From: Auanema rhodensis
Lineage: Eukaryota > Animalia > Nematoda
Assembly: GCA_964057225.1 (NCBI GenBank)
Contig: OZ059899.1
Span: 3,224,001 to 3,288,000 of the forward strand
Direction: 5' to 3'
DNA length: 64,000 nt
A program made the position numbers and the translations under genes. This document shows positions 1 through 20,337 of this stretch, one piece after another; within the stretch, counting starts at the first letter, position 1; every line of letters starts with the position of its first letter. The notes under the pieces were generated by a model, which saw only the letters and a list, made by a program, of their open reading frames with translations, had not been told where the DNA came from and searched no databases.

Positions 1-1230
1 ACTAGTCTCTATTGTCTCAAGTACTTGTAATGCACAAGTACATTCTCTGAGTACCTCATACAAAACTTGAGCTCTTGTGAACGATAACTTTGACATAGAC
101 AATCCGGGGTAAGCCTTCCTAGAAGTTTCTTCTAGTTTCTTACAAAAGCTTATTAGATTGCTATTGTTGTCAAACTTCAAAGATTTAAGAGCAGCTATGG
201 CATCTAACCTACTTGCTCTCTTAGAATACTCATGTTGCTTATTCAGTTCCTCTATTATTTTGTCGAGCGAACTGTTTCTGATTATTTCAGGCAACTCATC
301 ATACCTATCTCTCGCCTCTCCTCTTAATTTTTCTACAAACAGCGTTCTGCGGCCGCTTGCCGACAACGTGCTTTTTGGGTATTTCAGGTGAAACCCTTCT
401 ACAAAATAGTTCCATTTCTCGAACGACCCACTAGAAAAATCTGGAACATCAGGCAGCAATTGCGCTCGCATTATGTCCAAAAACGCTTCATTCTGCGCGC
501 TGAGTCCATTTAAAGGCAAAGATGACTCACCCTTGGAGTCTAATCCCTCTTTTTTCTGTTCCTGTTGAACATCCGTCAACCATTTCTGAGTTGTTCTTAA
601 CTCCTTCTGTCGATGCAACTGTAAAATATATTCAATTTCAGAATTTTCCTCTTCTATTTTACCTGCTGCTTTGTCATCAATCATCATATCCGCCATAGCT
701 AATTGCGCTTGGCTCTCGATAGCTGCTGATCTCTGCAAATTAAAACTATTAAATATTTCATGCTTCAAAGATTTCTTATCACATTTAAAAAAATCGCATA
801 AATCTTTCATAGTACTATTAATGGCCCTCATCTCGTCCACTATCTCACTTTCATTGAGTTGGAAAATCTCACAAATGAATTTAGTTGTTTCCGCTCGTTT
901 ATCAGCTAACTTCAGAGTATTACCCAACTCTGAAGGCTTTTTGAGCCCACTCTTGTTCATTACTGTAATAATGGACTGGATAAATCTCCAATTTTGCCCT
1001 TTTCGCAATTCACTAGCTAAATTTTGCTTCATTGAGTTTATCAAATTAGCAACTTTCTGCTCTGCTCTCCTTTTCTCAGCAGAATTTCTGATTTTTTCCG
1101 TAAAATCTTTACGTAAACAATCATTCAACGGCTCAATAGCCGATAATATTTCAGAGATGAATGAATTCAACATTACCTCTTCGAATGCACTCTCGAAGTC
1201 CATATCGAGCAATTCATTCACAAATGACAT
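1..1230 (-). CDS. gag: Gag-protease polyprotein, N-terminal part (runs off the window edge)
   Basis: Same frame as the 773-aa ORF of copies 2-4, ATG at 1230, no stop seen. Differences in 773-aa numbering: K49E (1098), silent F152 (787), H279Y (408), S355L (179). Confidence 0.85.
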   Translation of the reverse strand, partial: MSFVNELLDMDFESAFEEVMLNSFISEILSAIEPLNDCLRKDFTEKIRNSAEKRRAEQKVANLINSMKQNLASELRKGQNWRFIQSIITVMNKSGLKKPSELGNTLKLADKRAETTKFICEIFQLNESEIVDEMRAINSTMKDLCDFFKCDKKSLKHEIFNSFNLQRSAAIESQAQLAMADMMIDDKAAGKIEEENSEIEYILQLHRQKELRTTQKWLTDVQQEQKKEGLDSKGESSLPLNGLSAQNEAFLDIMRAQLLPDVPDFSSGSFEKWNYFVEGFHLKYPKSTLSASGRRTLFVEKLRGEARDRYDELPEIIRNSSLDKIIEELNKQHEYSKRASRLDAIAALKSLKFDNNSNLISFCKKLEETSRKAYPGLSMSKLSFTRAQVLYEVLRECTCALQVLETIETS

Positions 1231-1644
1231 TTCACCTATCAATGAAAAAAATTACTAGAAGTTTCCTCTACTAATTTATTGCTATTTGAAAGAATCAAAC
1301 AAGCACTTATATCAAGAAAATGGAATTTACTTGATATTAGTTACTACTACCCAAGTTCTGAATGTAGTTCACAGCGGAAGAAATCAGAAAAAGTGTTTAA
1401 AAGAAAACACTTCAACCAAAAACAACCGTACAACAATAAACCAAGAGACACTGTTGTTACCAACACTGTCAAATGATAATTGTTCTGTAAACTTCACTTT
1501 TATTCGGCAAATACCAAACAAAATTGAATGAATACAAACAGAACCCTATTCAGGTAGCAGTGACTTTTTCACCAAACTCTATTCGAGCTTTCAAACAGGG
1601 TTATATGAGCAATTAGCTCAACCCAAACAATAAAATAGTGAAGA

Positions 1645-1659
1645 CCGGTTCGGCCCCCA
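1645..1659 (-). other. Primer-binding site, tRNA-Pro (copy 1)
   Basis: Minus strand TGGGGGCCGAACCGG directly abuts the 5' LTR. It is the complement of CCGGTTCGGCCC+CCA, the 3' end of nematode tRNA-Pro as I recall it; a TGGGGGC start is the classic tRNA-Pro PBS (cf. MLV). Confidence 0.88.
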
Positions 1660-2038
1660 AATCAAAGAACGAAAAATAAAAAGAAAAAGATTTATTTAAA
1701 AAAACAAAAAAAAAATACAAAAAAATTCAAGAGAAAATTCCAAACTGAAAAAAATATAAAAAAATTCCTTATCACAATAATTTTAGGACAAAAACAACTA
1801 AATATTGTTTTAATCAGATTACGGTAGTTGATTATCAACAGTTCACTGTTTACCAACAATCTCTAAATGGAGCGCGATTACTATGGATTGTTTTATCAAT
1901 GGGTCATTTTATTCAAATTATTCATTTTATTTAATTTTTTCATGAATAATTGTTATCTTAATATTTTATATAAATTATATTATATATTTATCTTCATTTA
2001 TACTATTCATTTTAGTATCTATAGCCATATTCTTGACA
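1660..2038 (-). repeat. 5' LTR of copy 1 (379 bp)
   Basis: Direct repeat of 4150-4528. Minus strand TGTCAAGA...CTTTGATT; G at 1901. Confidence 0.93.
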
Positions 2039-4149
2039 AAATGTTTTTGGAAGCAATGTTGAGTGTACATGGAAACTCAACATACACTAATGCATCATTT
2101 TTCAAACGATCATAACTAATTTTTGTATTAAGCGTTTCTCAATGTAATATAGTGCATTCGATGCGGATTTTTAAGCTGCGTCGATCTGTGTTATCAGATT
2201 TGCGCTAGCTTAAAAATACACCGAGATATCAACTGATATAAGTTCACACTTATATCCTCGATTTTCACCCTGAAAAAATAATTTTTTCGTTGAATAACAT
2301 TGTCCATCGTCTTTGCCTTGAAAAATGGAATCTAAAAACATCTACTTTTTGCTAAATTATTTTGAAATTTTTCGAAAAAATTTTTGTCAAAATGTTTTTG
2401 GAAGCAATGTTGAGTGTACATGGAAACTCAACATACACTAATGCATCATTTTTCAAACGATCATAACTAATTTTTGTATTAAGCGTTTCTCAATGTAGTA
2501 TAGTGCATTCGATGCGGATTTTTAAGCTGCGTCGATCTGTGTTATCAGATTCGCGCTAGCTTAAAAATGCACCGAGATATCAACTGATATAAGTTCACAC
2601 TTATATCCTCGATTTTCACCCTGAAGAAATAATTTTTTCGTTGAATAACATTGTCCATCGTCTTTGCCTTGAAAAATGGAATCTAAAAACATCTACTTTT
2701 TGCTAAATTATTTTGAAATTTTTCGAAAAAATTTTTGTCAAAATGTTTTTGGAAGCAATGTTGAGTGTACATGGAAACTCAACATACACTAATGCATCAT
2801 TTTTCAAACGATCATAACTAATTTTTGTATTAAGCGTTTCTCAATGTAGTATAGTGCATTCGATGCGGATTTTTAAGCTGCGTCGATCTGTGTTATCAGA
2901 TTTGCGCTAGCTTAGAAATGCACCGAGATATCAACTGATATAAGTTCACACTTATATCCTCGATTTTCACCCTGAAGAATTAATTTTTTCGTTGAATAAC
3001 ATTGTCCATCGTCTTTGCCTTGAAAAATGGAATCTTAAAACATCTACTTTTTGCTAAATTATTTTGAAATTTTTCGAAAAAATTTTTGTCAAAATGTTTT
3101 TGGAAGCAATGTTGAGTGTACATGGAAACTCAACATACACTAATGCATCATTTTTCAAACGATCATAACTAATTTTTGTATTAAGCGTTTCTCAATGTAG
3201 TATAGTGCATTCGATGCGGATTTTTAAGCTGCGTCGATCTGTGTTATCAGATTTGCGCAAGCTTAAAAATGCACCGAGATATCAACTGATATAAGTTCAC
3301 ACTTATATCCTCGATTTTCACCCTGAAGAATTAATTTTTTCGTTGAATAACATTGTCCATCGTCTTTGCCTTGAAAAAAGAAATCTAAAAACATCTACTT
3401 TTTGCTAAATTATTTTGAAATTTTTCGAAAAAATTTTTGTCAAAATGTTTTTGGAAGCAATGTTGAGTGTACATGGAAACTCAACATACACTAATGCATC
3501 ATTTTTCAAACGATCATAACTAATTTTTGTATTAAGCGTTTCTCAATGTAGTATAGTGCATTCGATGCGGATTTTTAAGCTGCGTCGATCTGTGTTATCA
3601 GATTTGCGCTAGCTTAAAAATGCACCGAGATATCAACTGATATAAGTTCGCACATATATACCCGATTTTCACCCTGAAGAATTAATTTTTTCGTTGAATA
3701 ACATTGTCCATCGTCTTTGAATTGAAAAATGAAATCTTAAAACATCTACTTTTTGCTAAATTATTTTGAAATTTTTCGAAAAAATTTTTGTCAAAATGTT
3801 TTTGGAAGCAATGTTGAGTGTACATGGAAACTCAACATACACTAATGCATCATTTTTCAAACGATCATAACTAATTTTTGTATCAAGTGTTTCTCAATGT
3901 AGTATAGTGCATTCGATGCGGATTTTTAAGCTGCGTCGATCTGTGTTATCAGATTTGCGCTAGCTTAAAAATGCACCGAGATATCAACTGATATAAGTTC
4001 ACACTTATATCCTCGATTTTCACCCTGAAGAATTAATTTTTTCGTTGAATAACATTGTCCATCGTCTTTGCCTTGAAAAATGGAATCTAAAAACATCTAC
4101 TTTTTGCTAAATTATTTTGAAATTTTTCGAAAAAATTTTTGTCAAAATG
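2039..4149. repeat. 351-bp satellite spacer, 6 monomers plus 5-bp TSD
   Basis: 2111 bp = 6x351+5; starts and ends with AAATG. Confidence 0.97.
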
Positions 4150-4528
4150 AATCAAAGAACGAAAAATAAAAAGAAAAAGATTTATTTAAAAAAACAAAAA
4201 AAAAATACAAAAAAATTCAAGAGAAAATTCCAAACTGAAAAAAATATAAAAAAATTCCTTATCACAATAATTTTAGGACAAAAACAACTAAATATTGTTT
4301 TAATCAGATTACGGTAGTTGATTATCAACAGTTCACTGTTTACCAACAATCTCTAAATGGAGCGCGATTACTATGGATTGTTTTATCAATTGGTCATTTT
4401 ATTCAAATTATTCATTTTATTTAATTTTTTCATGAATAATTGTTATCTTAATATTTTATATAAATTATATTATATATTTATCTTCATTTATACTATTCAT
4501 TTTAGTATCTATAGCCATATTCTTGACA
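4150..4528 (-). repeat. 3' LTR of copy 2 (379 bp)
   Basis: Direct repeat, preceded on the minus strand by the PPT; T at 4391. Confidence 0.93.
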
Positions 4529-4541
4529 TCCCCGGCCTCTC
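4529..4541 (-). other. Polypurine tract (copy 2)
   Basis: Minus strand GAGAGGCCGGGGA immediately before the TG of the 3' LTR (11/13 purines). Confidence 0.75.
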
Positions 4542-4669
4542 AAATTTCTCGTCCCGAGAAAAAATAATTCTTATTACTATTTATTCAATAGTTTAACAGT
4601 TTCATTAAAAACAACAATAAAAATAAACATTCACAACATACATGAGAAAATTTAAATTTCAACAAGAAA

Positions 4670-6979
4670 TTAGTTATGGTGCTGTTTTTTAAACTGTTGT
4701 TGAGGCTTATGGGTTTTGTGCATCTCATTCAGTGCAGTCAGCTTTTCAGTCCAATTCTCGGACTCCCATTTACCGACAATCTCTCCTTTCTTTATCGTGG
4801 TTGGCTGGCATGTCATGTTAGCCACAATCACTGTAGTGGAACTATTGGTGTCCACTTTACATATTCCCGTGGGTATATCACTCCTATGGGATACCAGTAA
4901 GCTATCTTTCTGCTCGTCACATGAGATTTGTAGCGTTCTACTTTTATTCGCAGGTATATAAACTCTCTGTAAGGCTATGGCCTCTTTTCTATAAAACTTC
5001 AAAGATATGCCCAAATCTTTCAGGGCATTCGTACCAATAAGTATAGAATCATCTCTACTTTTTCTCACCAAAAAACATACTTGTGCAGTTTTTTTACTTT
5101 CTGAGCAATAAACTTCACAGCTTATTGCTCCAACAAAATTCATTCGCGTACCCGAGGCATTTGCTATGAACTTATCTCCATTCCAAGGAAGTTGAGTTAC
5201 ACTTCTATTTAAGTCAACCCCTTCATTCATCAAATTAACTAGAGCTTGTGACGACATCACTGATATTTGCGATCCCGTGTCAATAAGAACTTTTTTATTT
5301 CTCATGCTGCAGATTAACATAGGTAGTAAACTCTGCTCACCAATCAATTTTGCATCATAGCTATTGTTGCATGTTTTGATAGTTTTGTTCCATGCAACAG
5401 CTTGCTCATTCATAACAGAACCCATATTGTTCTGTTCTTGTTCAATTCTTTTAGAATTGTCTGATGGTCGTTTTCTTTCAGCACAATGTGTTGCTATATG
5501 ACCACTTCTGTTACATATGTAACAAATAACTTCTTTTCTCTGTGGAAAATTACGAACCTTTTCAGTTACGTAACTGTCACGATTGGTCATGTGTTGACCA
5601 CTAGCAGTATTATTCTGCTTCAAAAATCTCAGCCTGGGCAGGTTTACTTCAGGTATTCTGTCCTTTCTATGCTGATTGTAGTGAATGCGCTTATTTCTTT
5701 CACAACGTAAAGCGACCTCTTTCACCTTCTCATACACCTCCCCTTCTTCACTAGTCTCTATTGTCTCAAGTACTTGTAATGCACAAGTACATTCTCTGAG
5801 TACCTCATACAAAACTTGAGCTCTTGTGAACGATAACTTTGACATAGACAATCCGGGGTAAGCCTTCCTAGAAGTTTCTTCTAGTTTCTTACAAAAGCTT
5901 ATTAGATTGCTATTGTTGTCAAACTTCGAAGATTTAAGAGCAGCTATGGCATCTAACCTACTTGCTCTCTTAGAATACTCATGTTGCTTATTCAGTTCCT
6001 CTATTATTTTGTCGAGCGAACTGTTTCTGATTATTTCAGGCAACTCATCATACCTATCTCTCGCCTCTCCTCTTAATTTTTCTACAAACAGCGTTCTGCG
6101 GCCGCTTGCCGACAACGTGCTTTTTGGGTATTTCAGGTGAAACCCTTCTACAAAATGGTTCCATTTCTCGAACGACCCACTAGAAAAATCTGGAACATCA
6201 GGCAGCAATTGCGCTCGCATTATGTCCAAAAACGCTTCATTCTGCGCGCTGAGTCCATTTAAAGGCAAAGATGACTCACCCTTGGAGTCTAATCCCTCTT
6301 TTTTCTGTTCCTGTTGAACATCCGTCAACCATTTCTGAGTTGTTCTTAACTCCTTCTGTCGATGCAACTGTAAAATATATTCAATTTCAGAATTTTCCTC
6401 TTCTATTTTACCTGCTGCTTTGTCATCAATCATCATATCCGCCATAGCTAATTGCGCTTGGCTCTCGATAGCTGCTGATCTCTGCAAATTAAAACTATTA
6501 AATATTTCATGCTTCAAAGATTTCTTATCACATTTGAAAAAATCGCATAAATCTTTCATAGTACTATTAATGGCCCTCATCTCGTCCACTATCTCACTTT
6601 CATTGAGTTGGAAAATCTCACAAATGAATTTAGTTGTTTCCGCTCGTTTATCAGCTAACTTCAGAGTATTACCCAACTCTGAAGGCTTTTTGAGCCCACT
6701 CTTGTTCATTACTGTAATAATGGACTGGATAAATCTCCAATTTTGCCCTTTTCGCAATTCACTAGCTAAATTTTGCTTCATTGAGTTTATCAAATTAGCA
6801 ACTTTCTGCTCTGCTCTCCTTTTCTCAGCAGAATTTCTGATTTTTTTCGTAAAATCTTTACGTAAACAATCATTCAACGGCTCAATAGCCGATAATATTT
6901 CAGAGATGAATGAATTCAACATTACCTCTTCGAATGCACTCTCGAAGTCCATATCGAGCAATTCATTCACAAATGACAT
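4670..6979 (-). CDS. gag: Gag-protease polyprotein (769 aa from ATG 6979; ORF track starts at TTG 6991, 773 aa)
   Basis: Capsid-like block PDFSSGSFEKWNHFVEGF...LRGEARDRY. CCHC zinc knuckle CYICNRSGHIATHC (5483-5524). Retropepsin active site LIDTGSQIS (DTG 5273-5281) with ILIGTNAL. Stop at 4670; no RT YxDD, RNase H or integrase. Confidence 0.93.
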   Translation of the reverse strand: MSFVNELLDMDFESAFEEVMLNSFISEILSAIEPLNDCLRKDFTKKIRNSAEKRRAEQKVANLINSMKQNLASELRKGQNWRFIQSIITVMNKSGLKKPSELGNTLKLADKRAETTKFICEIFQLNESEIVDEMRAINSTMKDLCDFFKCDKKSLKHEIFNSFNLQRSAAIESQAQLAMADMMIDDKAAGKIEEENSEIEYILQLHRQKELRTTQKWLTDVQQEQKKEGLDSKGESSLPLNGLSAQNEAFLDIMRAQLLPDVPDFSSGSFEKWNHFVEGFHLKYPKSTLSASGRRTLFVEKLRGEARDRYDELPEIIRNSSLDKIIEELNKQHEYSKRASRLDAIAALKSSKFDNNSNLISFCKKLEETSRKAYPGLSMSKLSFTRAQVLYEVLRECTCALQVLETIETSEEGEVYEKVKEVALRCERNKRIHYNQHRKDRIPEVNLPRLRFLKQNNTASGQHMTNRDSYVTEKVRNFPQRKEVICYICNRSGHIATHCAERKRPSDNSKRIEQEQNNMGSVMNEQAVAWNKTIKTCNNSYDAKLIGEQSLLPMLICSMRNKKVLIDTGSQISVMSSQALVNLMNEGVDLNRSVTQLPWNGDKFIANASGTRMNFVGAISCEVYCSESKKTAQVCFLVRKSRDDSILIGTNALKDLGISLKFYRKEAIALQRVYIPANKSRTLQISCDEQKDSLLVSHRSDIPTGICKVDTNSSTTVIVANMTCQPTTIKKGEIVGKWESENWTEKLTALNEMHKTHKPQQQFKKQHHN

Positions 6980-7393
6980 TTCACCTATCAATGAAAAAAA
7001 TTACTAGAAGTTTCCTCTACTAATTTATTGCTATTTGAAAGAATCAAACAAGCACTTATATCAAGAAAATGGAATTTACTTGATATTAGTTACTACTACC
7101 CAAGTTCTGAATGTAGTTCACAGCGGAAGAAATCAGAAAAAGTGTTTAAAAGAAAACACTTCAACCAAAAACAACCGTACAACAATAAACCAAGAGACAC
7201 TGTTGTTACCAACACTGTCAAATGATAATTGTTCTGTAAACTTCACTTTTATTCGGCAAATACCAAACAAAATTGAATGAATACAAACAGAACCCTATTC
7301 AGGTAGCAGTGACTTTTTCACCAAACTCTATTCGAGCTTTCAAACAGGGTTATATGAGCAATTAGCTCAACCCAAACAATAAAATAGTGAAGA

Positions 7394-7408
7394 CCGGTTC
7401 GGCCCCCA
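7394..7408 (-). other. Primer-binding site, tRNA-Pro (copy 2)
   Basis: TGGGGGCCGAACCGG adjacent to the 5' LTR. Confidence 0.88.
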
Positions 7409-7787
7409 AATCAAAGAACGAAAAATAAAAAGAAAAAGATTTATTTAAAAAAACAAAAAAAAAATACAAAAAAATTCAAGAGAAAATTCCAAACTGAAAA
7501 AAATATAAAAAAATTCCTTATCACAATAATTTTAGGACAAAAACAACTAAATATTGTTTTAATCAGATTACGGTAGTTGATTATCAACAGTTCACTGTTT
7601 ACCAACAATCTCTAAATGGAGCGCGATTACTATGGATTGTTTTATCAATGGGTCATTTTATTCAAATTATTCATTTTATTTAATTTTTTCATGAATAATT
7701 GTTATCTTAATATTTTATATAAATTATATTATATATTTATCTTCATTTATACTATTCATTTTAGTATCTATAGCCATATTCTTGACA
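7409..7787 (-). repeat. 5' LTR of copy 2 (379 bp)
   Basis: Direct repeat; G at 7650. Confidence 0.93.
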
Positions 7788-9898: not shown

Positions 9899-10276
9899 AA
9901 TCAAAGAACGAAAAATAAAAAGAAAAAGATTTATTTAAAAAAACAAAAAAAAATACAAAAAAATTCAAGAGAAAATTCCAAACTGAAAAAAATATAAAAA
10001 AATTCCTTATCACAATAATTTTAGGACAAAAACAACTAAATATTGTTTTAATCAGATTACGGTAGTTGATTATCAACAGTTCACTGTTTACCAACAATCT
10101 CTAAATGGAGCGCGATTACTATGGATTGTTTTATCAATTGGTCATTTTATTCAAATTATTCATTTTATTTAATTTTTTCATGAATAATTGTTATCTTAAT
10201 ATTTTATATAAATTATATTATATATTTATCTTCATTTATACTATTCATTTTAGTATCTATAGCCATATTCTTGACA
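9899..10276 (-). repeat. 3' LTR of copy 3 (378 bp)
   Basis: Direct repeat; T at 10139. Confidence 0.93.
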
Positions 10277-10289
10277 TCCCCGGCCTCTC
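10277..10289 (-). other. Polypurine tract (copy 3)
   Basis: GAGAGGCCGGGGA before the 3' LTR. Confidence 0.75.
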
Positions 10290-10417
10290 AAATTTCTCGT
10301 CCCGAGAAAAAATAATTCTTATTACTATTTATTCAATAGTTTAACAGTTTCATTAAAAACAACAATAAAAATAAACATTCACAACATACATGAGAAAATT
10401 TAAATTTCAACAAGAAA

Positions 10418-12727
10418 TTAGTTATGGTGCTGTTTTTTAAACTGTTGTTGAGGCTTATGGGTTTTGTGCATCTCATTCAGTGCAGTCAGCTTTTCAGTCC
10501 AATTCTCGGACTCCCATTTACCGACAATCTCTCCTTTCTTTATCGTGGTTGGCTGGCATGTCATGTTAGCCACAATCACTGTAGTGGAACTATTGGTGTC
10601 CACTTTACATATTCCCGTGGGTATATCACTCCTATGGGATACCAGTAAGCTATCTTTCTGCTCGTCACATGAGATTTGTAGCGTTCTACTTTTATTCGCA
10701 GGTATATAAACTCTCTGTAAGGCTATGGCCTCTTTTCTATAAAACTTCAAAGATATGCCCAAATCTTTCAGGGCATTCGTACCAATAAGTATAGAATCAT
10801 CTCTACTTTTTCTCACCAAAAAACATACTTGTGCAGTTTTTTTACTTTCTGAGCAATAAACTTCACAGCTTATTGCTCCAACAAAATTCATTCGCGTACC
10901 CGAGGCATTTGCTATGAACTTATCTCCATTCCAAGGAAGTTGAGTTACACTTCTATTTAAGTCAACCCCTTCATTCATCAAATTAACTAGAGCTTGTGAC
11001 GACATCACTGATATTTGCGATCCCGTGTCAATAAGAACTTTTTTATTTCTCATGCTGCAGATTAACATAGGTAGTAAACTCTGCTCACCAATCAATTTTG
11101 CATCATAGCTATTGTTGCATGTTTTGATAGTTTTGTTCCATGCAACAGCTTGCTCATTCATAACAGAACCCATATTGTTCTGTTCTTGTTCAATTCTTTT
11201 AGAATTGTCTGATGGTCGTTTTCTTTCAGCACAATGTGTTGCTATATGACCACTTCTGTTACATATGTAACAAATAACTTCTTTTCTCTGTGGAAAATTA
11301 CGAACCTTTTCAGTTACGTAACTGTCACGATTGGTCATGTGTTGACCACTAGCAGTATTATTCTGCTTCAAAAATCTCAGCCTGGGCAGGTTTACTTCAG
11401 GTATTCTGTCCTTTCTATGCTGATTGTAGTGAATGCGCTTATTTCTTTCACAACGTAAAGCGACCTCTTTCACCTTCTCATACACCTCCCCTTCTTCACT
11501 AGTCTCTATTGTCTCAAGTACTTGTAATGCACAAGTACATTCTCTGAGTACCTCATACAAAACTTGAGCTCTTGTGAACGATAACTTTGACATAGACAAT
11601 CCGGGGTAAGCCTTCCTAGAAGTTTCTTCTAGTTTCTTACAAAAGCTTATTAGATTGCTATTGTTGTCAAACTTCGAAGATTTAAGAGCAGCTATGGCAT
11701 CTAACCTACTTGCTCTCTTAGAATACTCATGTTGCTTATTCAGTTCCTCTATTATTTTGTCGAGCGAACTGTTTCTGATTATTTCAGGCAACTCATCATA
11801 CCTATCTCTCGCCTCTCCTCTTAATTTTTCTACAAACAGCGTTCTGCGGCCGCTTGCCGACAACGTGCTTTTTGGGTATTTCAGGTGAAACCCTTCTACA
11901 AAATGGTTCCATTTCTCGAACGACCCACTAGAAAAATCTGGAACATCAGGCAGCAATTGCGCTCGCATTATGTCCAAAAACGCTTCATTCTGCGCGCTGA
12001 GTCCATTTAAAGGCAAAGATGACTCACCCTTGGAGTCTAATCCCTCTTTTTTCTGTTCCTGTTGAACATCCGTCAACCATTTCTGAGTTGTTCTTAACTC
12101 CTTCTGTCGATGCAACTGTAAAATATATTCAATTTCAGAATTTTCCTCTTCTATTTTACCTGCTGCTTTGTCATCAATCATCATATCCGCCATAGCTAAT
12201 TGCGCTTGGCTCTCGATAGCTGCTGATCTCTGCAAATTAAAACTATTAAATATTTCATGCTTCAAAGATTTCTTATCACATTTGAAAAAATCGCATAAAT
12301 CTTTCATAGTACTATTAATGGCCCTCATCTCGTCCACTATCTCACTTTCATTGAGTTGGAAAATCTCACAAATGAATTTAGTTGTTTCCGCTCGTTTATC
12401 AGCTAACTTCAGAGTATTACCCAACTCTGAAGGCTTTTTGAGCCCACTCTTGTTCATTACTGTAATAATGGACTGGATAAATCTCCAATTTTGCCCTTTT
12501 CGCAATTCACTAGCTAAATTTTGCTTCATTGAGTTTATCAAATTAGCAACTTTCTGCTCTGCTCTCCTTTTCTCAGCAGAATTTCTGATTTTTTTCGTAA
12601 AATCTTTACGTAAACAATCATTCAACGGCTCAATAGCCGATAATATTTCAGAGATGAATGAATTCAACATTACCTCTTCGAATGCACTCTCGAAGTCCAT
12701 ATCGAGCAATTCATTCACAAATGACAT
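10418..12727 (-). CDS. gag: Gag-protease polyprotein, copy 3
   Basis: ORF-track protein identical to copy 2 (CCHC knuckle, DTG protease). Confidence 0.93.
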   Translation of the reverse strand: MSFVNELLDMDFESAFEEVMLNSFISEILSAIEPLNDCLRKDFTKKIRNSAEKRRAEQKVANLINSMKQNLASELRKGQNWRFIQSIITVMNKSGLKKPSELGNTLKLADKRAETTKFICEIFQLNESEIVDEMRAINSTMKDLCDFFKCDKKSLKHEIFNSFNLQRSAAIESQAQLAMADMMIDDKAAGKIEEENSEIEYILQLHRQKELRTTQKWLTDVQQEQKKEGLDSKGESSLPLNGLSAQNEAFLDIMRAQLLPDVPDFSSGSFEKWNHFVEGFHLKYPKSTLSASGRRTLFVEKLRGEARDRYDELPEIIRNSSLDKIIEELNKQHEYSKRASRLDAIAALKSSKFDNNSNLISFCKKLEETSRKAYPGLSMSKLSFTRAQVLYEVLRECTCALQVLETIETSEEGEVYEKVKEVALRCERNKRIHYNQHRKDRIPEVNLPRLRFLKQNNTASGQHMTNRDSYVTEKVRNFPQRKEVICYICNRSGHIATHCAERKRPSDNSKRIEQEQNNMGSVMNEQAVAWNKTIKTCNNSYDAKLIGEQSLLPMLICSMRNKKVLIDTGSQISVMSSQALVNLMNEGVDLNRSVTQLPWNGDKFIANASGTRMNFVGAISCEVYCSESKKTAQVCFLVRKSRDDSILIGTNALKDLGISLKFYRKEAIALQRVYIPANKSRTLQISCDEQKDSLLVSHRSDIPTGICKVDTNSSTTVIVANMTCQPTTIKKGEIVGKWESENWTEKLTALNEMHKTHKPQQQFKKQHHN

Positions 12728-13141
12728 TTCACCTATCAATGAAAAAAATTACTAGAAGTTTCCTCTACTAATTTATTGCTATTTGAAAGAATCAAACAAG
12801 CACTTATATCAAGAAAATGGAATTTACTTGATATTAGTTACTACTACCCAAGTTCTGAATGTAGTTCACAGCGGAAGAAATCAGAAAAAGTGTTTAAAAG
12901 AAAACACTTCAACCAAAAACAACCGTACAACAATAAACCAAGAGACACTGTTGTTACCAACACTGTCAAATGATAATTGTTCTGTAAACTTCACTTTTAT
13001 TCGGCAAATACCAAACAAAATTGAATGAATACAAACAGAACCCTATTCAGGTAGCAGTGACTTTTTCACCAAACTCTATTCGAGCTTTCAAACAGGGTTA
13101 TATGAGCAATTAGCTCAACCCAAACAATAAAATAGTGAAGA

Positions 13142-13156
13142 CCGGTTCGGCCCCCA
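13142..13156 (-). other. Primer-binding site, tRNA-Pro (copy 3)
   Basis: TGGGGGCCGAACCGG adjacent to the 5' LTR. Confidence 0.88.
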
Positions 13157-13535
13157 AATCAAAGAACGAAAAATAAAAAGAAAAAGATTTATTTAAAAAA
13201 ACAAAAAAAAAATACAAAAAAATTCAAGAGAAAATTCCAAACTGAAAAAAATATAAAAAAATTCCTTATCACAATAATTTTAGGACAAAAACAACTAAAT
13301 ATTGTTTTAATCAGATTACGGTAGTTGATTATCAACAGTTCACTGTTTACCAACAATCTCTAAATGGAGCGCGATTACTATGGATTGTTTTATCAATGGG
13401 TCATTTTATTCAAATTATTCATTTTATTTAATTTTTTCATGAATAATTGTTATCTTAATATTTTATATAAATTATATTATATATTTATCTTCATTTATAC
13501 TATTCATTTTAGTATCTATAGCCATATTCTTGACA
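13157..13535 (-). repeat. 5' LTR of copy 3 (379 bp)
   Basis: Direct repeat; G at 13398. Confidence 0.93.
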
Positions 13536-16500
13536 AAATGTTTTTGGAAGCAATGTTGAGTGTACATGGAAACTCAACATACACTAATGCATCATTTTTC
13601 AAAAGATCATAACTAATTTTTTCATCAAGCGTTTTTCAATGTAGTATAGTGCATTCGATGCGGATTTTTAAGCTGCGTCGATCTGTGTTATCAGATTTGC
13701 GCTAGCTTAAAAATGCACCGAGATATCAACTGATATAAGTTCACACTTATATCCTCGATTTTCACCCTGAAGAAATAATTTTTTCGTTGAATAACATTGT
13801 CCATCGTCTTTGCCTTGAAAAAAGGAATCTAAAAACATCTACTTTTTGCTAAATTATTCTGAAATTTTTCGAAAAAATTTTTGTCAAAATGTTTTTGGAA
13901 GCAATGTTGAGTGTACATGGAAACTCAACATACACTAATGCATCATTTTTCAAACGATCATAACTAATTTTTGTATTAAGCGTTTCTCAATGTAGTATAG
14001 TGCATTCGATGCGGATTTTTAAGCTGCGTCGATCTGTGTTATCAGATTTGCGCTAGCTTAAAAATACACCGAGATATCAACTGATATAAGTTCACACTTA
14101 TATCCTCGATTTTCACCCTGAAAAAATAATTTTTTCGTTGAATAACATTGTCCATCGTCTTTGCCTTGAAAAAAGGAATCTAAAAACATCTACTTTTTGC
14201 TAAATTATTTTGAAATTTTTCGAAAAAATTTTTGTCAAAATGTTTTTGGAAGCAATGTTGAGTGTACATGGAAACTCAACATACACTAATGCATCATTTT
14301 TCAAACGATCATAACTAATTTTTGTATTAAGCGTTTCTCAATGTAGTATAGTGCATTCGATGCGGATTTTTAAGCTGCGTCGATCTGTGTTATCAGATTC
14401 GCGCTAGCTTAAAAATGCACCGAGATATCAACTGATATAAGTTCACACTTATATCCTCGATTTTCACCCTGAAGAAATAATTTTTTCGTTGAATAACATT
14501 GTCCATCGTCTTTGCCTTGAAAAATGGAATCTAAAAACATCTACTTTTTGCTAAATTATTTTGAAATTTTTCGAAAAAATTTTTGTCAAAATGTTTTTGG
14601 AAGCAATGTTGAGTGTACATGGAAACTCAACATACACTAATGCATCATTTTTCAAACGATCATAACTAATTTTTGTATTAAGCGTTTCTCAATGTAGTAT
14701 AGTGCATTCGATGCGGATTTTTAAGCTGCGTCGATCTGTGTTATCAGATTTGCGCTAGCTTAGAAATGCACCGAGATATCAACTGATATAAGTTCACACT
14801 TATATCCTCGATTTTCACCCTGAAGAATTAATTTTTTCGTTGAATAACATTGTCCATCGTCTTTGCCTTGAAAAATGGAATCTTAAAACATCTACTTTTT
14901 GCTAAATTATTTTGAAATTTTTCGAAAAAATTTTTGTCAAAATGTTTTTGGAAGCAATGTTGAGTGTACATGGAAACTCAACATACACTAATGCATCATT
15001 TTTCAAACGATCATAACTAATTTTTGTATTAAGCGTTTCTCAATGTAGTATAGTGCATTCGATGCGGATTTTTAAGCTGCGTCGATCTGTGTTATCAGAT
15101 TTGCGCAAGCTTAAAAATGCACCGAGATATCAACTGATATAAGTTCACACTTATATCCTCGATTTTCACCCTGAAGAATTAATTTTTTCGTTGAATAACA
15201 TTGTCCATCGTCTTTGCCTTGAAAAAAGGAATCTAAAAACATCTACTTTTTGCTAAATTATTTTGAAATTTTTCGAAAAAATTTTTGTCAAAATGTTTTT
15301 GGAAGCAATGTTGAGTGTACATGGAAACTCAACATACACTAATGCATCATTTTTCAAACGATCATAACTAATTTTTGTATTAAGCGTTTCTCAATGTAGT
15401 ATAGTGCATTCGATGCGGATTTTTAAGCTGCGTCGATCTGTGTTATCAGATTTGCGCTAGCTTAAAAATGCACCGAGATATCAACTGATATAAGTTCGCA
15501 CATATATACCCGATTTTCACCCTGAAGAATTAATTTTTTCGTTGAATAACATTGTCCATCGTCTTTGAATTGAAAAATGAAATCTTAAAACATCTACTTT
15601 TTGCTAAATTATTTTGAAATTTTTCGAAAAAATTTTTGTCAAAATGTTTTTGGAAGCAATGTTGAGTGTACATGGAAACTCAACATACACTAATGCATCA
15701 TTTTTCAAACGATCATAACTAATTTTTGTATTAAGCGTTTCTCAATGTAGTATAGTGCATTCGATGCGGATTTTTAAGCTGCGTCGATCTGTGTTATCAG
15801 ATTTGCGCAAGCTTAAAAATGCACCGAGATATCAACTGATATAAGTTCACACTTATATCCTCGATTTTCACCCTGAAGAATTAATTTTTTCGTTGAATAA
15901 CATTGTCCATCGTCTTTGCCTTGAAAAAAGGAATCTAAAAACATCTACTTTTTGCTAAATTATTTTGAAATTTTTCGAAAAAATTTTTGTCAAAATGTTT
16001 TTGGAAGCAATGTTGAGTGTACATGGAAACTCAACATACACTAATGCATCATTTTTCAAACGATCATAACTAATTTTTGTATTAAGCGTTTCTCAATGTA
16101 GTATAGTGCATTCGATGCGGATTTTTAAGCTGCGTCGATCTGTGTTATCAGATTTGCGCTAGCTTAAAAATGCACCGAGATATCAACTGATATAAGTTCG
16201 CACATATATACCCGATTTTCACCCTGAAGAATTAATTTTTTCGTTGAATAACATTGTCCATCGTCTTTGAATTGAAAAATGAAATCTTAAAACATCTACT
16301 TTTTGCTAAATTATTTTGAAATTTTTCGAAAAAATTTTTGTCAAAATGTTTTTGGAAGCAATGTTGAGTGTACATGGAAACTCAACATACACTAATGCAT
16401 CATTTTTCAAACGATCATAACTAATTTTTGTATCAAGTGTTTCTCAATGTAGTATAGTGCATTCGATGCGGATTTTTAAGCTGCGTCGATCTGTGTTATC

Positions 16501-16699
16501 AGATTTGCGCTAGCTTAAAAATGCACCGAGATATCAACTGATATAAGTTCACACTTATATCCTCGATTTTCACCCTGAAGAATTAATTTTTTCGTTGAAT
16601 AACATTGTCCATCGTCTTTGCCTTGAAAAATGGAATCTAAAAACATCTACTTTTTGCTAAATTATTTTGAAATTTTTCGAAAAAATTTTTGTCAAAATG
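13536..16699. repeat. 351-bp satellite spacer, 9 monomers plus 5-bp TSD
   Basis: 3164 bp = 9x351+5. Confidence 0.97.
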
Positions 16700-17078
16700 A
16701 ATCAAAGAACGAAAAATAAAAAGAAAAAGATTTATTTAAAAAAACAAAAAAAAAATACAAAAAAATTCAAGAGAAAATTCCAAACTGAAAAAAATATAAA
16801 AAAATTCCTTATCACAATAATTTTAGGACAAAAACAACTAAATATTGTTTTAATCAGATTACGGTAGTTGATTATCAACAGTTCACTGTTTACCAACAAT
16901 CTCTAAATGGAGCGCGATTACTATGGATTGTTTTATCAATTGGTCATTTTATTCAAATTATTCATTTTATTTAATTTTTTCATGAATAATTGTTATCTTA
17001 ATATTTTATATAAATTATATTATATATTTATCTTCATTTATACTATTCATTTTAGTATCTATAGCCATATTCTTGACA
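16700..17078 (-). repeat. 3' LTR of copy 4 (379 bp)
   Basis: Direct repeat; T at 16941. Confidence 0.93.
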
Positions 17079-17091
17079 TCCCCGGCCTCTC
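17079..17091 (-). other. Polypurine tract (copy 4)
   Basis: GAGAGGCCGGGGA before the 3' LTR. Confidence 0.75.
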
Positions 17092-17219
17092 AAATTTCTC
17101 GTCCCGAGAAAAAATAATTCTTATTACTATTTATTCAATAGTTTAACAGTTTCATTAAAAACAACAATAAAAATAAACATTCACAACATACATGAGAAAA
17201 TTTAAATTTCAACAAGAAA

Positions 17220-19529
17220 TTAGTTATGGTGCTGTTTTTTAAACTGTTGTTGAGGCTTATGGGTTTTGTGCATCTCATTCAGTGCAGTCAGCTTTTCAGT
17301 CCAATTCTCGGACTCCCATTTACCGACAATCTCTCCTTTCTTTATCGTGGTTGGCTGGCATGTCATGTTAGCCACAATCACTGTAGTGGAACTATTGGTG
17401 TCCACTTTACATATTCCCGTGGGTATATCACTCCTATGGGATACCAGTAAGCTATCTTTCTGCTCGTCACATGAGATTTGTAGCGTTCTACTTTTATTCG
17501 CAGGTATATAAACTCTCTGTAAGGCTATGGCCTCTTTTCTATAAAACTTCAAAGATATGCCCAAATCTTTCAGGGCATTCGTACCAATAAGTATAGAATC
17601 ATCTCTACTTTTTCTCACCAAAAAACATACTTGTGCAGTTTTTTTACTTTCTGAGCAATAAACTTCACAGCTTATTGCTCCAACAAAATTCATTCGCGTA
17701 CCCGAGGCATTTGCTATGAACTTATCTCCATTCCAAGGAAGTTGAGTTACACTTCTATTTAAGTCAACCCCTTCATTCATCAAATTAACTAGAGCTTGTG
17801 ACGACATCACTGATATTTGCGATCCCGTGTCAATAAGAACTTTTTTATTTCTCATGCTGCAGATTAACATAGGTAGTAAACTCTGCTCACCAATCAATTT
17901 TGCATCATAGCTATTGTTGCATGTTTTGATAGTTTTGTTCCATGCAACAGCTTGCTCATTCATAACAGAACCCATATTGTTCTGTTCTTGTTCAATTCTT
18001 TTAGAATTGTCTGATGGTCGTTTTCTTTCAGCACAATGTGTTGCTATATGACCACTTCTGTTACATATGTAACAAATAACTTCTTTTCTCTGTGGAAAAT
18101 TACGAACCTTTTCAGTTACGTAACTGTCACGATTGGTCATGTGTTGACCACTAGCAGTATTATTCTGCTTCAAAAATCTCAGCCTGGGCAGGTTTACTTC
18201 AGGTATTCTGTCCTTTCTATGCTGATTGTAGTGAATGCGCTTATTTCTTTCACAACGTAAAGCGACCTCTTTCACCTTCTCATACACCTCCCCTTCTTCA
18301 CTAGTCTCTATTGTCTCAAGTACTTGTAATGCACAAGTACATTCTCTGAGTACCTCATACAAAACTTGAGCTCTTGTGAACGATAACTTTGACATAGACA
18401 ATCCGGGGTAAGCCTTCCTAGAAGTTTCTTCTAGTTTCTTACAAAAGCTTATTAGATTGCTATTGTTGTCAAACTTCGAAGATTTAAGAGCAGCTATGGC
18501 ATCTAACCTACTTGCTCTCTTAGAATACTCATGTTGCTTATTCAGTTCCTCTATTATTTTGTCGAGCGAACTGTTTCTGATTATTTCAGGCAACTCATCA
18601 TACCTATCTCTCGCCTCTCCTCTTAATTTTTCTACAAACAGCGTTCTGCGGCCGCTTGCCGACAACGTGCTTTTTGGGTATTTCAGGTGAAACCCTTCTA
18701 CAAAATGGTTCCATTTCTCGAACGACCCACTAGAAAAATCTGGAACATCAGGCAGCAATTGCGCTCGCATTATGTCCAAAAACGCTTCATTCTGCGCGCT
18801 GAGTCCATTTAAAGGCAAAGATGACTCACCCTTGGAGTCTAATCCCTCTTTTTTCTGTTCCTGTTGAACATCCGTCAACCATTTCTGAGTTGTTCTTAAC
18901 TCCTTCTGTCGATGCAACTGTAAAATATATTCAATTTCAGAATTTTCCTCTTCTATTTTACCTGCTGCTTTGTCATCAATCATCATATCCGCCATAGCTA
19001 ATTGCGCTTGGCTCTCGATAGCTGCTGATCTCTGCAAATTAAAACTATTAAATATTTCATGCTTCAAAGATTTCTTATCACATTTGAAAAAATCGCATAA
19101 ATCTTTCATAGTACTATTAATGGCCCTCATCTCGTCCACTATCTCACTTTCATTGAGTTGGAAAATCTCACAAATGAATTTAGTTGTTTCCGCTCGTTTA
19201 TCAGCTAACTTCAGAGTATTACCCAACTCTGAAGGCTTTTTGAGCCCACTCTTGTTCATTACTGTAATAATGGACTGGATAAATCTCCAATTTTGCCCTT
19301 TTCGCAATTCACTAGCTAAATTTTGCTTCATTGAGTTTATCAAATTAGCAACTTTCTGCTCTGCTCTCCTTTTCTCAGCAGAATTTCTGATTTTTTTCGT
19401 AAAATCTTTACGTAAACAATCATTCAACGGCTCAATAGCCGATAATATTTCAGAGATGAATGAATTCAACATTACCTCTTCGAATGCACTCTCGAAGTCC
19501 ATATCGAGCAATTCATTCACAAATGACAT
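17220..19529 (-). CDS. gag: Gag-protease polyprotein, copy 4
   Basis: ORF-track protein identical to copy 2. Confidence 0.93.
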   Translation of the reverse strand: MSFVNELLDMDFESAFEEVMLNSFISEILSAIEPLNDCLRKDFTKKIRNSAEKRRAEQKVANLINSMKQNLASELRKGQNWRFIQSIITVMNKSGLKKPSELGNTLKLADKRAETTKFICEIFQLNESEIVDEMRAINSTMKDLCDFFKCDKKSLKHEIFNSFNLQRSAAIESQAQLAMADMMIDDKAAGKIEEENSEIEYILQLHRQKELRTTQKWLTDVQQEQKKEGLDSKGESSLPLNGLSAQNEAFLDIMRAQLLPDVPDFSSGSFEKWNHFVEGFHLKYPKSTLSASGRRTLFVEKLRGEARDRYDELPEIIRNSSLDKIIEELNKQHEYSKRASRLDAIAALKSSKFDNNSNLISFCKKLEETSRKAYPGLSMSKLSFTRAQVLYEVLRECTCALQVLETIETSEEGEVYEKVKEVALRCERNKRIHYNQHRKDRIPEVNLPRLRFLKQNNTASGQHMTNRDSYVTEKVRNFPQRKEVICYICNRSGHIATHCAERKRPSDNSKRIEQEQNNMGSVMNEQAVAWNKTIKTCNNSYDAKLIGEQSLLPMLICSMRNKKVLIDTGSQISVMSSQALVNLMNEGVDLNRSVTQLPWNGDKFIANASGTRMNFVGAISCEVYCSESKKTAQVCFLVRKSRDDSILIGTNALKDLGISLKFYRKEAIALQRVYIPANKSRTLQISCDEQKDSLLVSHRSDIPTGICKVDTNSSTTVIVANMTCQPTTIKKGEIVGKWESENWTEKLTALNEMHKTHKPQQQFKKQHHN

Positions 19530-19943
19530 TTCACCTATCAATGAAAAAAATTACTAGAAGTTTCCTCTACTAATTTATTGCTATTTGAAAGAATCAAACA
19601 AGCACTTATATCAAGAAAATGGAATTTACTTGATATTAGTTACTACTACCCAAGTTCTGAATGTAGTTCACAGCGGAAGAAATCAGAAAAAGTGTTTAAA
19701 AGAAAACACTTCAACCAAAAACAACCGTACAACAATAAACCAAGAGACACTGTTGTTACCAACACTGTCAAATGATAATTGTTCTGTAAACTTCACTTTT
19801 ATTCGGCAAATACCAAACAAAATTGAATGAATACAAACAGAACCCTATTCAGGTAGCAGTGACTTTTTCACCAAACTCTATTCGAGCTTTCAAACAGGGT
19901 TATATGAACAATTAGCTCAACCCAAACAATAAAATAGTGAAGA

Positions 19944-19958
19944 CCGGTTCGGCCCCCA
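19944..19958 (-). other. Primer-binding site, tRNA-Pro (copy 4)
   Basis: TGGGGGCCGAACCGG adjacent to the 5' LTR. Confidence 0.88.
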
Positions 19959-20337
19959 AATCAAAGAACGAAAAATAAAAAGAAAAAGATTTATTTAAAA
20001 AAACAAAAAAAAAATACAAAAAAATTCAAGAGAAAATTCCAAACTGAAAAAAATATAAAAAAATTCCTTATCACAATAATTTTAGGACAAAAACAACTAA
20101 ATATTGTTTTAATCAGATTACGGTAGTTGATTATCAACAGTTCACTGTTTACCAACAATCTCTAAATGGAGCGCGATTACTATGGATTGTTTTATCAATG
20201 GGTCATTTTATTCAAATTATTCATTTTATTTAATTTTTTCATGAATAATTGTTATCTTAATATTTTATATAAATTATATTATATATTTATCTTCATTTAT
20301 ACTATTCATTTTAGTATCTATAGCCATATTCTTGACA
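19959..20337 (-). repeat. 5' LTR of copy 4 (379 bp)
   Basis: Direct repeat; G at 20200. Confidence 0.93.

What the first reader, a model, noticed from the sequence alone, without database searches (positions are those of the whole stretch)
1..20337. Composite macro-repeat: an LTR retroelement with intact Gag-protease tandemly amplified as part of a satellite array
Seen: at least four copies of the element alternate with 6, 6 and 9 satellite monomers (units of 5749, 5748 and 6802 bp). All are in the same orientation at the same monomer base with the same AAATG flanks. All four 5' LTRs have G (1901, 7650, 13398, 20200) where all three 3' LTRs have T (4391, 10139, 16941). Established: reverse transcription makes the two LTRs of a new insertion identical, so a shared 5'/3' difference cannot come from independent transposition. 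Inference: a single recent insertion was multiplied by satellite turnover (unequal exchange or rolling circle). An RT-less, IN-less element thus gained copies of an intact capsid gene by hitch-hiking on satellite amplification, producing a protein-coding higher-order repeat at the array edge.
Basis: partly seen in the sequence, partly recalled or inferred. Interest (0 to 1): 0.8.

Follow-up and report, generated by a model that had tools for sequence, protein, structure and literature searches.

The report
Retroelement co-amplified with its host satellite
One insertion of a cut-down, nematode-type LTR retrotransposon (capsid and protease gene only) into a 351-bp satellite array was later copied at least four times together with the neighbouring satellite monomers; this is a clean example of a process already known from plant centromeres and other tandem arrays.

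Summary
Window 1-20337 holds three full copies and one cut copy of a 3,638-bp LTR element on the minus strand. The copies alternate with 6, 6 and 9 monomers of a 351-bp satellite, which then runs on to base 64000.

All copies sit at the same monomer base with AAATG on both sides. All four 5' LTRs carry G and all three 3' LTRs carry T at the same LTR position. The flanking monomers are the same sequence variants. Together these exclude independent insertions, so one insertion was multiplied afterwards along with its satellite neighbours.

The 773-aa ORF is open and identical in the three full copies. It has a capsid-like helical fold, a CCHC knuckle and a DTG protease. It aligns with the first 880 residues of a Gag-Pol with Ty3/gypsy domain order. 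All 28 relatives that carry an organism name are nematode proteins, 27 of them from strongylids. No RT, RNase H or integrase remains.

Two corrections. The two six-monomer blocks are not the same six monomers. The leftmost unit carries most of the private changes, which favours stepwise unequal exchange over one burst.

"Array edge" and the true copy number cannot be checked. An assembly artefact is unlikely but not excluded. This is a new member of a known kind, of moderate interest.

The parts
1..2038 (-). Element copy E0, cut by the window start. It holds the N-terminal 414 codons of the ORF, the 5' UTR and the 5' LTR (1660-2038).
   Evidence: 99.8% identical to 5750-7777. It has 4 private transitions, 3 non-synonymous and 1 synonymous, and no stop codon.
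2039..4149 (+). Satellite block S1: six 351-bp monomers, b' c' d g' e f, plus the AAATG duplication at 4145-4149.
4150..7787 (-). Element copy E1, complete, 3638 bp: 3' LTR 4150-4528, internal part 4529-7408, 5' LTR 7409-7787.
4529..4541 (-). Polypurine tract (GAGAGGCCGGGGA on the minus strand), directly upstream of the 3' LTR.
   Evidence: Read from the sequence.
4670..6991 (-). Gag-protease ORF: 773 codons from a TTG, or 769 from the first ATG at 6979. CCHC knuckle at 5483-5524 (aa 490-503); protease DTG at 5273-5281 (aa 571-573).
   Evidence: Pfam matches are sub-threshold: zf-CCHC, DUF1759, gag-asp_proteas, RVP. 354 relatives at E<=1e-3. Colinear with Gag-PR of the Gag-Pol protein P0062. 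Protease fold and capsid-like fold.
7394..7408 (-). Primer-binding-site-like stretch (TGGGGGCCGAACCGG on the minus strand), directly downstream of the 5' LTR. The tRNA was not identified.
   Evidence: Read from the sequence. The window holds no tRNA gene.
7788..9898 (+). Satellite block S2: six monomers, a b c d e f.
9899..13535 (-). Element copy E2, 3637 bp, one A shorter in an A-run of its 3' LTR. ORF at 10418-12739, identical to that of E1.
13536..16699 (+). Satellite block S3: nine monomers, a b c' d g e g e f.
16700..20337 (-). Element copy E3, 3638 bp, with one private G>A at 19908 in the 5' UTR. ORF at 17220-19541, identical to that of E1.
20338..64000 (+). Uninterrupted 351-bp satellite array: 109 monomers, one truncated 160-bp unit near 58,530-58,690, then about 15 more monomers. 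The first three monomers are an a/b hybrid, a c-like and a d-like monomer, which makes them the original right flank of the insertion.
7650..7650 (.). Diagnostic LTR difference: G in the 5' LTRs (1901, 7650, 13398, 20200) and T in the 3' LTRs (4391, 10139, 16941).

Best explanation
A non-autonomous Ty3/gypsy-type LTR retrotransposon inserted once into a 351-bp satellite array, producing a 5-bp AAATG duplication. It has two LTRs, a PBS-like stretch, a polypurine tract and a Gag-CCHC-protease ORF, but no RT, RNase H or integrase.

One of its LTRs then acquired a point change. After that, out-of-register homologous exchange in the array duplicated a segment made of the element plus about seven monomers (a b c d g e f). 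The exchange could have been between sister chromatids or homologues, or an equivalent replication-template switch.

Once two 3.6-kb copies existed, further unequal exchange raised the unit number to at least four. Slightly misaligned exchanges inside the satellite blocks removed monomer a from one block, removed g from another and duplicated g-e in a third.

The amplification was stepwise. The leftmost unit split off first, and the three units to its right are very recent.

Shown here: the anatomy, the single origin and the unequal divergence of the units. Inferred: the exchange mechanism and the order of events. The ORF copies are passengers; nothing here shows that they are expressed or selected.
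For: Same site, same orientation and same duplication in all copies. The chance for three further independent insertions is about 3e-9 if the element has no target preference.

The LTR G/T difference is shared by every copy.

Element copies are at least 99.8% identical. Corresponding monomers in the three blocks differ by 0-2 bases, whereas the mean pairwise difference in the main array is 9.6 of 351.

Monomer type e is at least 8 differences from all 109 main-array monomers.

The array to the right of the last copy starts with an a/b hybrid, a c-like and a d-like monomer. This fits blocks built from the original right flank (a-d) fused to the original left flank (g e f).

All block-length differences are clean whole-monomer gains or losses.

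The plain array also holds multi-monomer duplications, for example 33325-36483 repeated at 36484-39642. The same process therefore acts without any element.

The leftmost unit holds 7 of the 10 private changes (binomial P about 0.001), which argues for stepwise growth.

Element identity rests.
Against: No reads were available, so the copy number and even the tandem arrangement rest on the assembly alone.

The mechanism is inferred from the end state. Gene conversion or break-induced replication could leave the same pattern.

The excess of changes in the leftmost unit could also come from conversion by units further left, outside the window.

The proposed ancestral block of seven monomers is a parsimony guess from three blocks.
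Confidence: 0.8

Rival explanations
1. Assembly artefact: a single insertion, or fewer units, was falsely expanded into a tandem by the assembler, or haplotypes were stitched head to tail.
For: Near-identical 5.7-kb units inside a satellite are hard to assemble. The only indel between copies lies in a homopolymer A-run, which is a typical read error. No reads were available to check.
Against: Every unit is structurally distinct: b' c' d g' e f, then a b c d e f, then a b c' d g e g e f. The five point differences between element copies are all transitions, as expected of real mutations and not of long-read noise. Stitching two haplotypes would give two units, not four different ones.
Confidence: 0.07
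2. One-step amplification: a circle holding the element and about seven monomers was excised, copied by rolling-circle replication and re-integrated as a concatemer.
For: The units are head to tail and nearly identical. Rolling-circle replication is one of the published routes to TE tandems (PMC5932611, read).
Against: One burst predicts equally diverged units of equal length. Here the leftmost unit holds 7 of 10 private changes (P about 0.001), and the three blocks differ in monomer content. Unequal exchange would still be needed afterwards. The last copy is followed by the matching a/b-c-d flank, as expected for in-place duplication.
Confidence: 0.08
3. Independent insertions by an element that targets this exact satellite site, in the way R1/R2 target rDNA.
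For: The site, orientation and duplication are identical. A strictly site-specific integrase would produce this.
Against: New insertions have identical LTRs, yet all copies share the same 5'-G/3'-T difference. All copies share the same flanking monomer variants, including variants absent from the other 109 monomers. None of the roughly 124 monomers of the main array carries an insertion or a solo LTR.
Confidence: 0.01
4. The amplified Gag-protease genes are a functional multi-copy host or parasite gene cluster, and selection on dosage drove the amplification. They might supply Gag in trans or interfere with an autonomous partner.
For: The ORF is open and identical in three copies and open in the cut copy. 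The capsid and protease domains are predicted with high confidence.
Against: The copies are too young for an open ORF to mean anything. The only coding differences are 3 non-synonymous and 1 synonymous, with no sign of constraint. There are no expression data. Plain satellite segments amplify in the same way without any gene.
Confidence: 0.04

Closest known systems
ATHILA retrotransposons duplicated after integration within Arabidopsis CEN180 centromere arrays (Naish et al. 2021 preprint, 10.1101/2021.05.30.446350, read)
   Same: A Ty3/gypsy LTR element inserted in a satellite array is copied after integration, on the same chromosome. The authors attribute this to the mechanism that generates satellite higher-order repeats.
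   Different: In Arabidopsis there are five duplications, 8.9-538 kb apart, of mostly autonomous-type elements or solo LTRs. Here there are at least four directly adjacent units of 5.7-6.8 kb, forming a regular macro-repeat. The element is a Gag-PR-only derivative, and the host is probably a nematode.
TE tandem arrays in Drosophila: LTR-LTR recombination, rolling circle and double insertion (McGurk and Barbash 2018, PMC5932611, read); R1 arrays in rDNA
   Same: A mobile element becomes a tandem repeat and then expands by unequal exchange. For R1, the host array provides the homology.
   Different: LTR-LTR recombination gives neighbours that share one LTR. Double insertion gives neighbours separated only by the target site. 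Here each copy keeps both LTRs and its own duplication, and 6-9 satellite monomers separate the copies. The first duplication therefore used satellite homology, not the element's own repeats or a second insertion.
Bovine 1.711 satellites, in which an LTR-like insertion in a satellite monomer was amplified with the satellite (from my own knowledge of the early-1980s literature; not checked here)
   Same: A retroelement-derived insertion with a target-site duplication became part of the repeat unit of a satellite.
   Different: The bovine insert is a short non-coding LTR-like piece, fixed in a very large old array. Here a complete two-LTR element with an open ORF sits in a handful of very young units.
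Non-autonomous LTR retrotransposons that keep gag but lack pol, such as BARE-2-type elements, LARDs and TRIMs (from my own knowledge)
   Same: LTRs, PBS and PPT are kept, pol is lost, and mobility would depend on an autonomous partner.
   Different: This element keeps Gag and protease. Its relatives are nematode Ty3/gypsy Gag-Pol proteins. No autonomous partner from the same genome was available.

Membership tests
LTR retrotransposon, Ty3/gypsy (Metaviridae) lineage | Two direct long terminal repeats flanked by a short target-site duplication | tested here: met
   The 379-bp LTRs differ at 1 base within each copy, with AAATG on both sides. The termini are TG...TT and not the usual TG...CA.
LTR retrotransposon, Ty3/gypsy (Metaviridae) lineage | Primer binding site next to the 5' LTR and polypurine tract next to the 3' LTR | tested here: inconclusive
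   A TGG-initiated 15-nt stretch at 7394-7408 and a purine-rich 13-mer at 4529-4541 sit in the right places. The matching tRNA was not identified.
LTR retrotransposon, Ty3/gypsy (Metaviridae) lineage | Gag with a capsid fold and a CCHC nucleocapsid knuckle | tested here: met
   CX2CX4HX4C at aa 490-503. For the model of aa 245-450 (pLDDT 94), the best PDB matches are PNMA2, Copia and Arc/dArc capsids, at modest scores (E 6e-3 to 0.3, TM 0.4-0.48). Pfam matches on the window protein itself are all below the curated cut-offs. 24 of the 33 aligned sequences match zf-CCHC at E<=0.001.
LTR retrotransposon, Ty3/gypsy (Metaviridae) lineage | Retropepsin-type aspartic protease with D-T/S-G | tested here: met
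   LIDTGS at aa 569-574. The model matches HIV-1, EIAV and FIV proteases with probability 1.0 and TM 0.62-0.68 normalised to the target. 18 of the 33 aligned sequences match gag-asp_proteas at E<=0.001.
LTR retrotransposon, Ty3/gypsy (Metaviridae) lineage | Pol with RT, RNase H and integrase in that order | tested here: not met
   Only 141 bp lie between the stop codon and the 3' LTR. tblastn with the RT- or IN-bearing relatives P0062 and P0023 finds nothing beyond Gag-PR. P0062 itself has RVT_1, RT_RNaseH, Integrase_H2C2 and rve. The window element is therefore a pol-less derivative of that lineage, not an autonomous member.
BEL/Pao LTR retrotransposons | Pao-type Gag (DUF1759) with a Pao-type protease (Peptidase_A17/DUF1758) | tested here: not met
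   DUF1759 scores only 14.9-21.3 bits against a cut-off of 25.4. There is no Peptidase_A17 or DUF1758 match. The full-length relative has Ty3/gypsy-type pol domains.
Composite macro-repeat made by post-integration co-amplification of a TE with its host satellite | All copies at the same site, in the same orientation and with the same duplication | tested here: met
Composite macro-repeat made by post-integration co-amplification of a TE with its host satellite | A post-insertion mutation shared by all copies (the LTR pair differs in the same way in each) | tested here: met
   G versus T at LTR column 242 in all 7 LTRs.
Composite macro-repeat made by post-integration co-amplification of a TE with its host satellite | The flanking host repeats are copied as well (same monomer variants in the same order) | tested here: met
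   The orders b' c' d g' e f, a b c d e f and a b c' d g e g e f show 0-2 differences between corresponding monomers, against 9.6 on average in the array.
Composite macro-repeat made by post-integration co-amplification of a TE with its host satellite | The tandem arrangement is present in the organism's DNA and not only in the assembly | not testable with these tools
   No reads were available. Only indirect support exists, from unit-specific differences.
LTR-LTR recombination tandems and double-insertion tandems | Neighbouring copies share one LTR, or are separated only by the target site | tested here: not met
   Each copy has two LTRs, and 2.1-3.2 kb of satellite separates the copies.

The most novel reading that the evidence does not exclude
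The array is more than a passenger. A pol-less element's capsid-protease gene has become a young multi-copy gene cluster, and its dosage matters. For example, it could act as a trans-acting Gag that parasitises or restrains an autonomous partner element. It could also be a capsid source of the kind proposed for nematode Cer1 particles. In this reading, satellite turnover serves as the copy-number engine.
Probability: 0.05. Interest if true: 0.75.

Novelty: new member of a known kind. Interest (0 to 1): 0.36.

Why it matters
This is an unusually legible snapshot of how satellite turnover handles a transposon insertion. The LTR difference, the duplication and the monomer variants together time-stamp each step: insertion, LTR mutation, first duplication, later duplications and monomer gains or losses. 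It shows that a transposon can gain copies without transposing, and that a plain satellite can start turning into a 5.7-kb composite repeat. If the host is a strongylid-related nematode, as the protein relatives suggest, it would add an animal example to a phenomenon documented mainly in plant centromeres. It also warns that counts of 'young intact LTR elements' in satellite-rich assemblies can be inflated by post-integration duplication.

Tried and rejected
- The word-based protein search with the whole ORF found nothing. Pfam on the whole ORF gave only a sub-threshold zinc knuckle. I therefore used the exhaustive HMMER search.
- I considered BEL/Pao membership because of weak DUF1759 hits and rejected it.
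- I tried to name the satellite or the organism and failed. Satellite k-mers in the paper library gave 0 hits. A '351 bp satellite' text search gave one unrelated plant paper. A scan of metagenome contigs for a 24-mer gave 0 hits. Rfam and the tRNA scan found nothing. The window is not human: it holds an AT-rich 351-bp satellite and a nematode-type Gag.
- I looked for a regular higher-order repeat in the main array. There is none, only local block duplications.
- I looked for pol remnants with tblastn and found none.
- The first Foldseek run on aa 230-773 was swamped by protease matches. I modelled the helical part separately.
The copies were only compared.
Full report
**What is in the window**

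A 351-bp, AT-rich satellite (about 31% G+C) fills 20338-64000 without interruption, apart from one truncated 160-bp unit near 58,530-58,690. In 1-20337 the same satellite appears as three short blocks: 2039-4149, 7788-9898 and 13536-16699. These are 6, 6 and 9 monomers. The blocks alternate with four copies of a 3,638-bp sequence: 1-2038 (cut by the window start), 4150-7787, 9899-13535 and 16700-20337.

**Anatomy of the element**

Each full copy is bounded by 379-bp direct repeats and lies on the minus strand. In that orientation the layout is:
- The 5' LTR (for example 7409-7787) is followed at once by a TGG-initiated stretch, TGGGGGCCGAACCGG, which looks like a primer binding site.
- The 3' LTR (4150-4528) is preceded by a purine run, GAGAGGCCGGGGA.
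- The LTR termini are TG...TT, not the canonical TG...CA.
- An intact monomer reads TGTCAAAATGTTTTTGG. At every copy the left flank ends in AAATG and the right flank begins with AAATG, which is a 5-bp target-site duplication.
- Between the LTRs lie a 417-bp leader, one ORF of 773 codons (769 from the first ATG) and 141 bp.

**The protein**

The ORF is identical in the three full copies. The cut copy is open over its 414 codons, with 3 non-synonymous changes and 1 synonymous change. The ORF carries a CX2CX4HX4C knuckle at aa 490-503 and LIDTGS at aa 569-574.

Pfam matches on the window protein are all below the curated thresholds: zf-CCHC, DUF1759, gag-asp_proteas and RVP. The word-based search was blank, so I ran the exhaustive search. 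It found 354 proteins at E<=1e-3, with the best at 34% identity. The window's own protein family is therefore not in the collection at 50% identity or more.

Of the 28 hits I looked up, 25 carry an organism name; with three further cluster members that makes 28 named proteins, all from nematodes. Twenty-seven are strongylid (Cooperia, Ostertagia, Haemonchus, Ancylostoma, Nippostrongylus, Cylicocyclus, Trichostrongylus) and one is from Caenorhabditis japonica.

The 2,191-aa relative P0062 has a zinc knuckle, RVT_1, RT_RNaseH, Integrase_H2C2 and rve, in that order. The window ORF (aa 159-745) aligns colinearly with its residues 218-878, and its RT starts at residue 1008. tblastn with the pol-bearing relatives finds nothing in the element beyond Gag-PR.

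Structure predictions built on an alignment of relatives are confident. For aa 230-773 the mean pLDDT is 82.9. For aa 245-450 it is 94.2. The C-terminal beta domain matches retroviral proteases (probability 1.0, TM 0.62-0.68 on the target). The helical domain's best matches are the PNMA2, Copia and Arc/dArc capsids, at modest scores.

The element is therefore a pol-less, non-autonomous derivative of a nematode Ty3/gypsy lineage with an open Gag-CCHC-protease gene. The host is probably a rhabditine nematode near the strongylids, but I could not name it. The window is not human.

**One insertion or several?**

Three lines of evidence agree on a single insertion.
1. All copies share the site, the orientation and the duplication. 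For three extra independent insertions without target preference the chance is about 3e-9.
2. The seven LTRs differ at only two columns. One is a 1-base A-run length change in one LTR. The other is column 242, which is G in all four 5' LTRs (1901, 7650, 13398, 20200) and T in all three 3' LTRs (4391, 10139, 16941). Reverse transcription rebuilds both LTRs from one template (established retroviral mechanism), so a shared 5'/3' difference must be a post-insertion mutation that was copied as DNA.
3. The flanking monomers are the same variants. I named the monomers of the second block a to f. The blocks then read b' c' d g' e f, a b c d e f, and a b c' d g e g e f. Corresponding monomers differ by 0-2 bases, against a mean of 9.6 of 351 in the main array. 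Type e is at least 8 differences from all 109 main-array monomers.

Independent, site-specific insertion is thus excluded for practical purposes.

**How it was amplified**

The array to the right of the last copy begins with an a/b hybrid, then a c-like and a d-like monomer, and then diverges. This fits a first unequal exchange that fused the original right flank (a-d) to the original left flank (g e f). That would create a unit made of the element plus about seven monomers. This step is an inference.

Later exchanges between units would raise the unit number. Small misalignments within blocks explain the clean whole-monomer differences: loss of a, loss of g and duplication of g-e.

The plain array shows the same kind of event without any element. 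Nine monomers at 33325-36483 are repeated at 36484-39642 with at most 1 difference each.

The units are not equally diverged. The leftmost unit has 4 of the 6 private changes in the elements (P = 0.007) and 7 of 10 when the satellite blocks are included (P about 0.001). This favours stepwise growth over a single rolling-circle burst. Conversion from unseen units further left could mimic this pattern.

**Could it be an assembly artefact?**

I cannot test this without reads. Against it, each unit is structurally distinct and all five point differences between copies are transitions. I give it about 7%.

**Comparison with what is known**

Post-integration duplication of Ty3/gypsy elements inside satellite arrays has been described for ATHILA in Arabidopsis CEN180 arrays. 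There, five duplications 8.9-538 kb apart were attributed to the mechanism that makes satellite higher-order repeats (10.1101/2021.05.30.446350).

Published routes to TE tandems are LTR-LTR recombination, rolling circle and double insertion, each followed by unequal exchange (PMC5932611). None of these fits the first step here, because every copy keeps both LTRs and its own duplication, and 2.1-3.2 kb of satellite separates the copies.

The older bovine 1.711 satellite case, an LTR-like insert amplified with a satellite, is similar in principle. I cite it from memory only.

The finding is therefore a new, very clean and very young member of a known kind. It has two less common traits: a regular adjacent macro-repeat, and an open Gag-protease gene in each unit.

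**What remains open**

- Whether the structure lies at an array edge.
- How many units lie to the left of the window.
- Whether the ORF is expressed or matters.
- Which organism this is.

The open ORF by itself says little, because the copies are too young to have decayed.

One bench test, mobilisation of the element, is referred.

Noticed in passing
window 58530-58690: One truncated satellite unit of about 160 bp interrupts the otherwise strict 351-bp register of the main array.
   Followed up: partly
window 33325-36483 and 36484-39642: A block of nine monomers is repeated directly, with at most 1 difference per monomer. The main array otherwise has no regular higher-order period, only scattered short block duplications at lags 5-46.
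   Followed up: partly
window 20338-20688 (any monomer): As single-stranded DNA the monomer folds far better than shuffled versions (-50.6 versus -32.1 kcal/mol, z = -5.2). It holds several short dyad symmetries, including TTTTCGAAAA next to the insertion site.
   Followed up: no
window 4150-4528 and 7409-7787 (all LTRs): In element orientation the LTR termini are TG...TT, not the canonical TG...CA. The inner bases form an imperfect inverted repeat (TCAAG / CTTTGA).
   Followed up: no
window 1904-1943, 4394-4433, 7653-7692 and the same place in every LTR: An 18-bp unit (TCATTTTATTCAAATTAT) is repeated 2.2 times inside each LTR, right next to the G/T difference.
   Followed up: no
window 6304-6991, minus strand (ORF aa 1-230): The N-terminal 230 or so residues of the ORF match no family. 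Only some relatives align there; for example P0003 aligns from aa 62. They were not modelled.
   Followed up: no
window 3443-3793, 9192-9542, 15291-15641, 15993-16343 (monomer type e): This monomer variant is identical in all four places. It is at least 8 differences from every one of the 109 main-array monomers, so the original left flank of the insertion came from a variant not seen elsewhere in the window.
   Followed up: partly
window 7394-7408, minus strand: The PBS-like stretch implies a tRNA 3' end of ...CCGGTTCGGCCCCCA. I could not assign it to a tRNA, and the window holds no tRNA gene.
   Followed up: no
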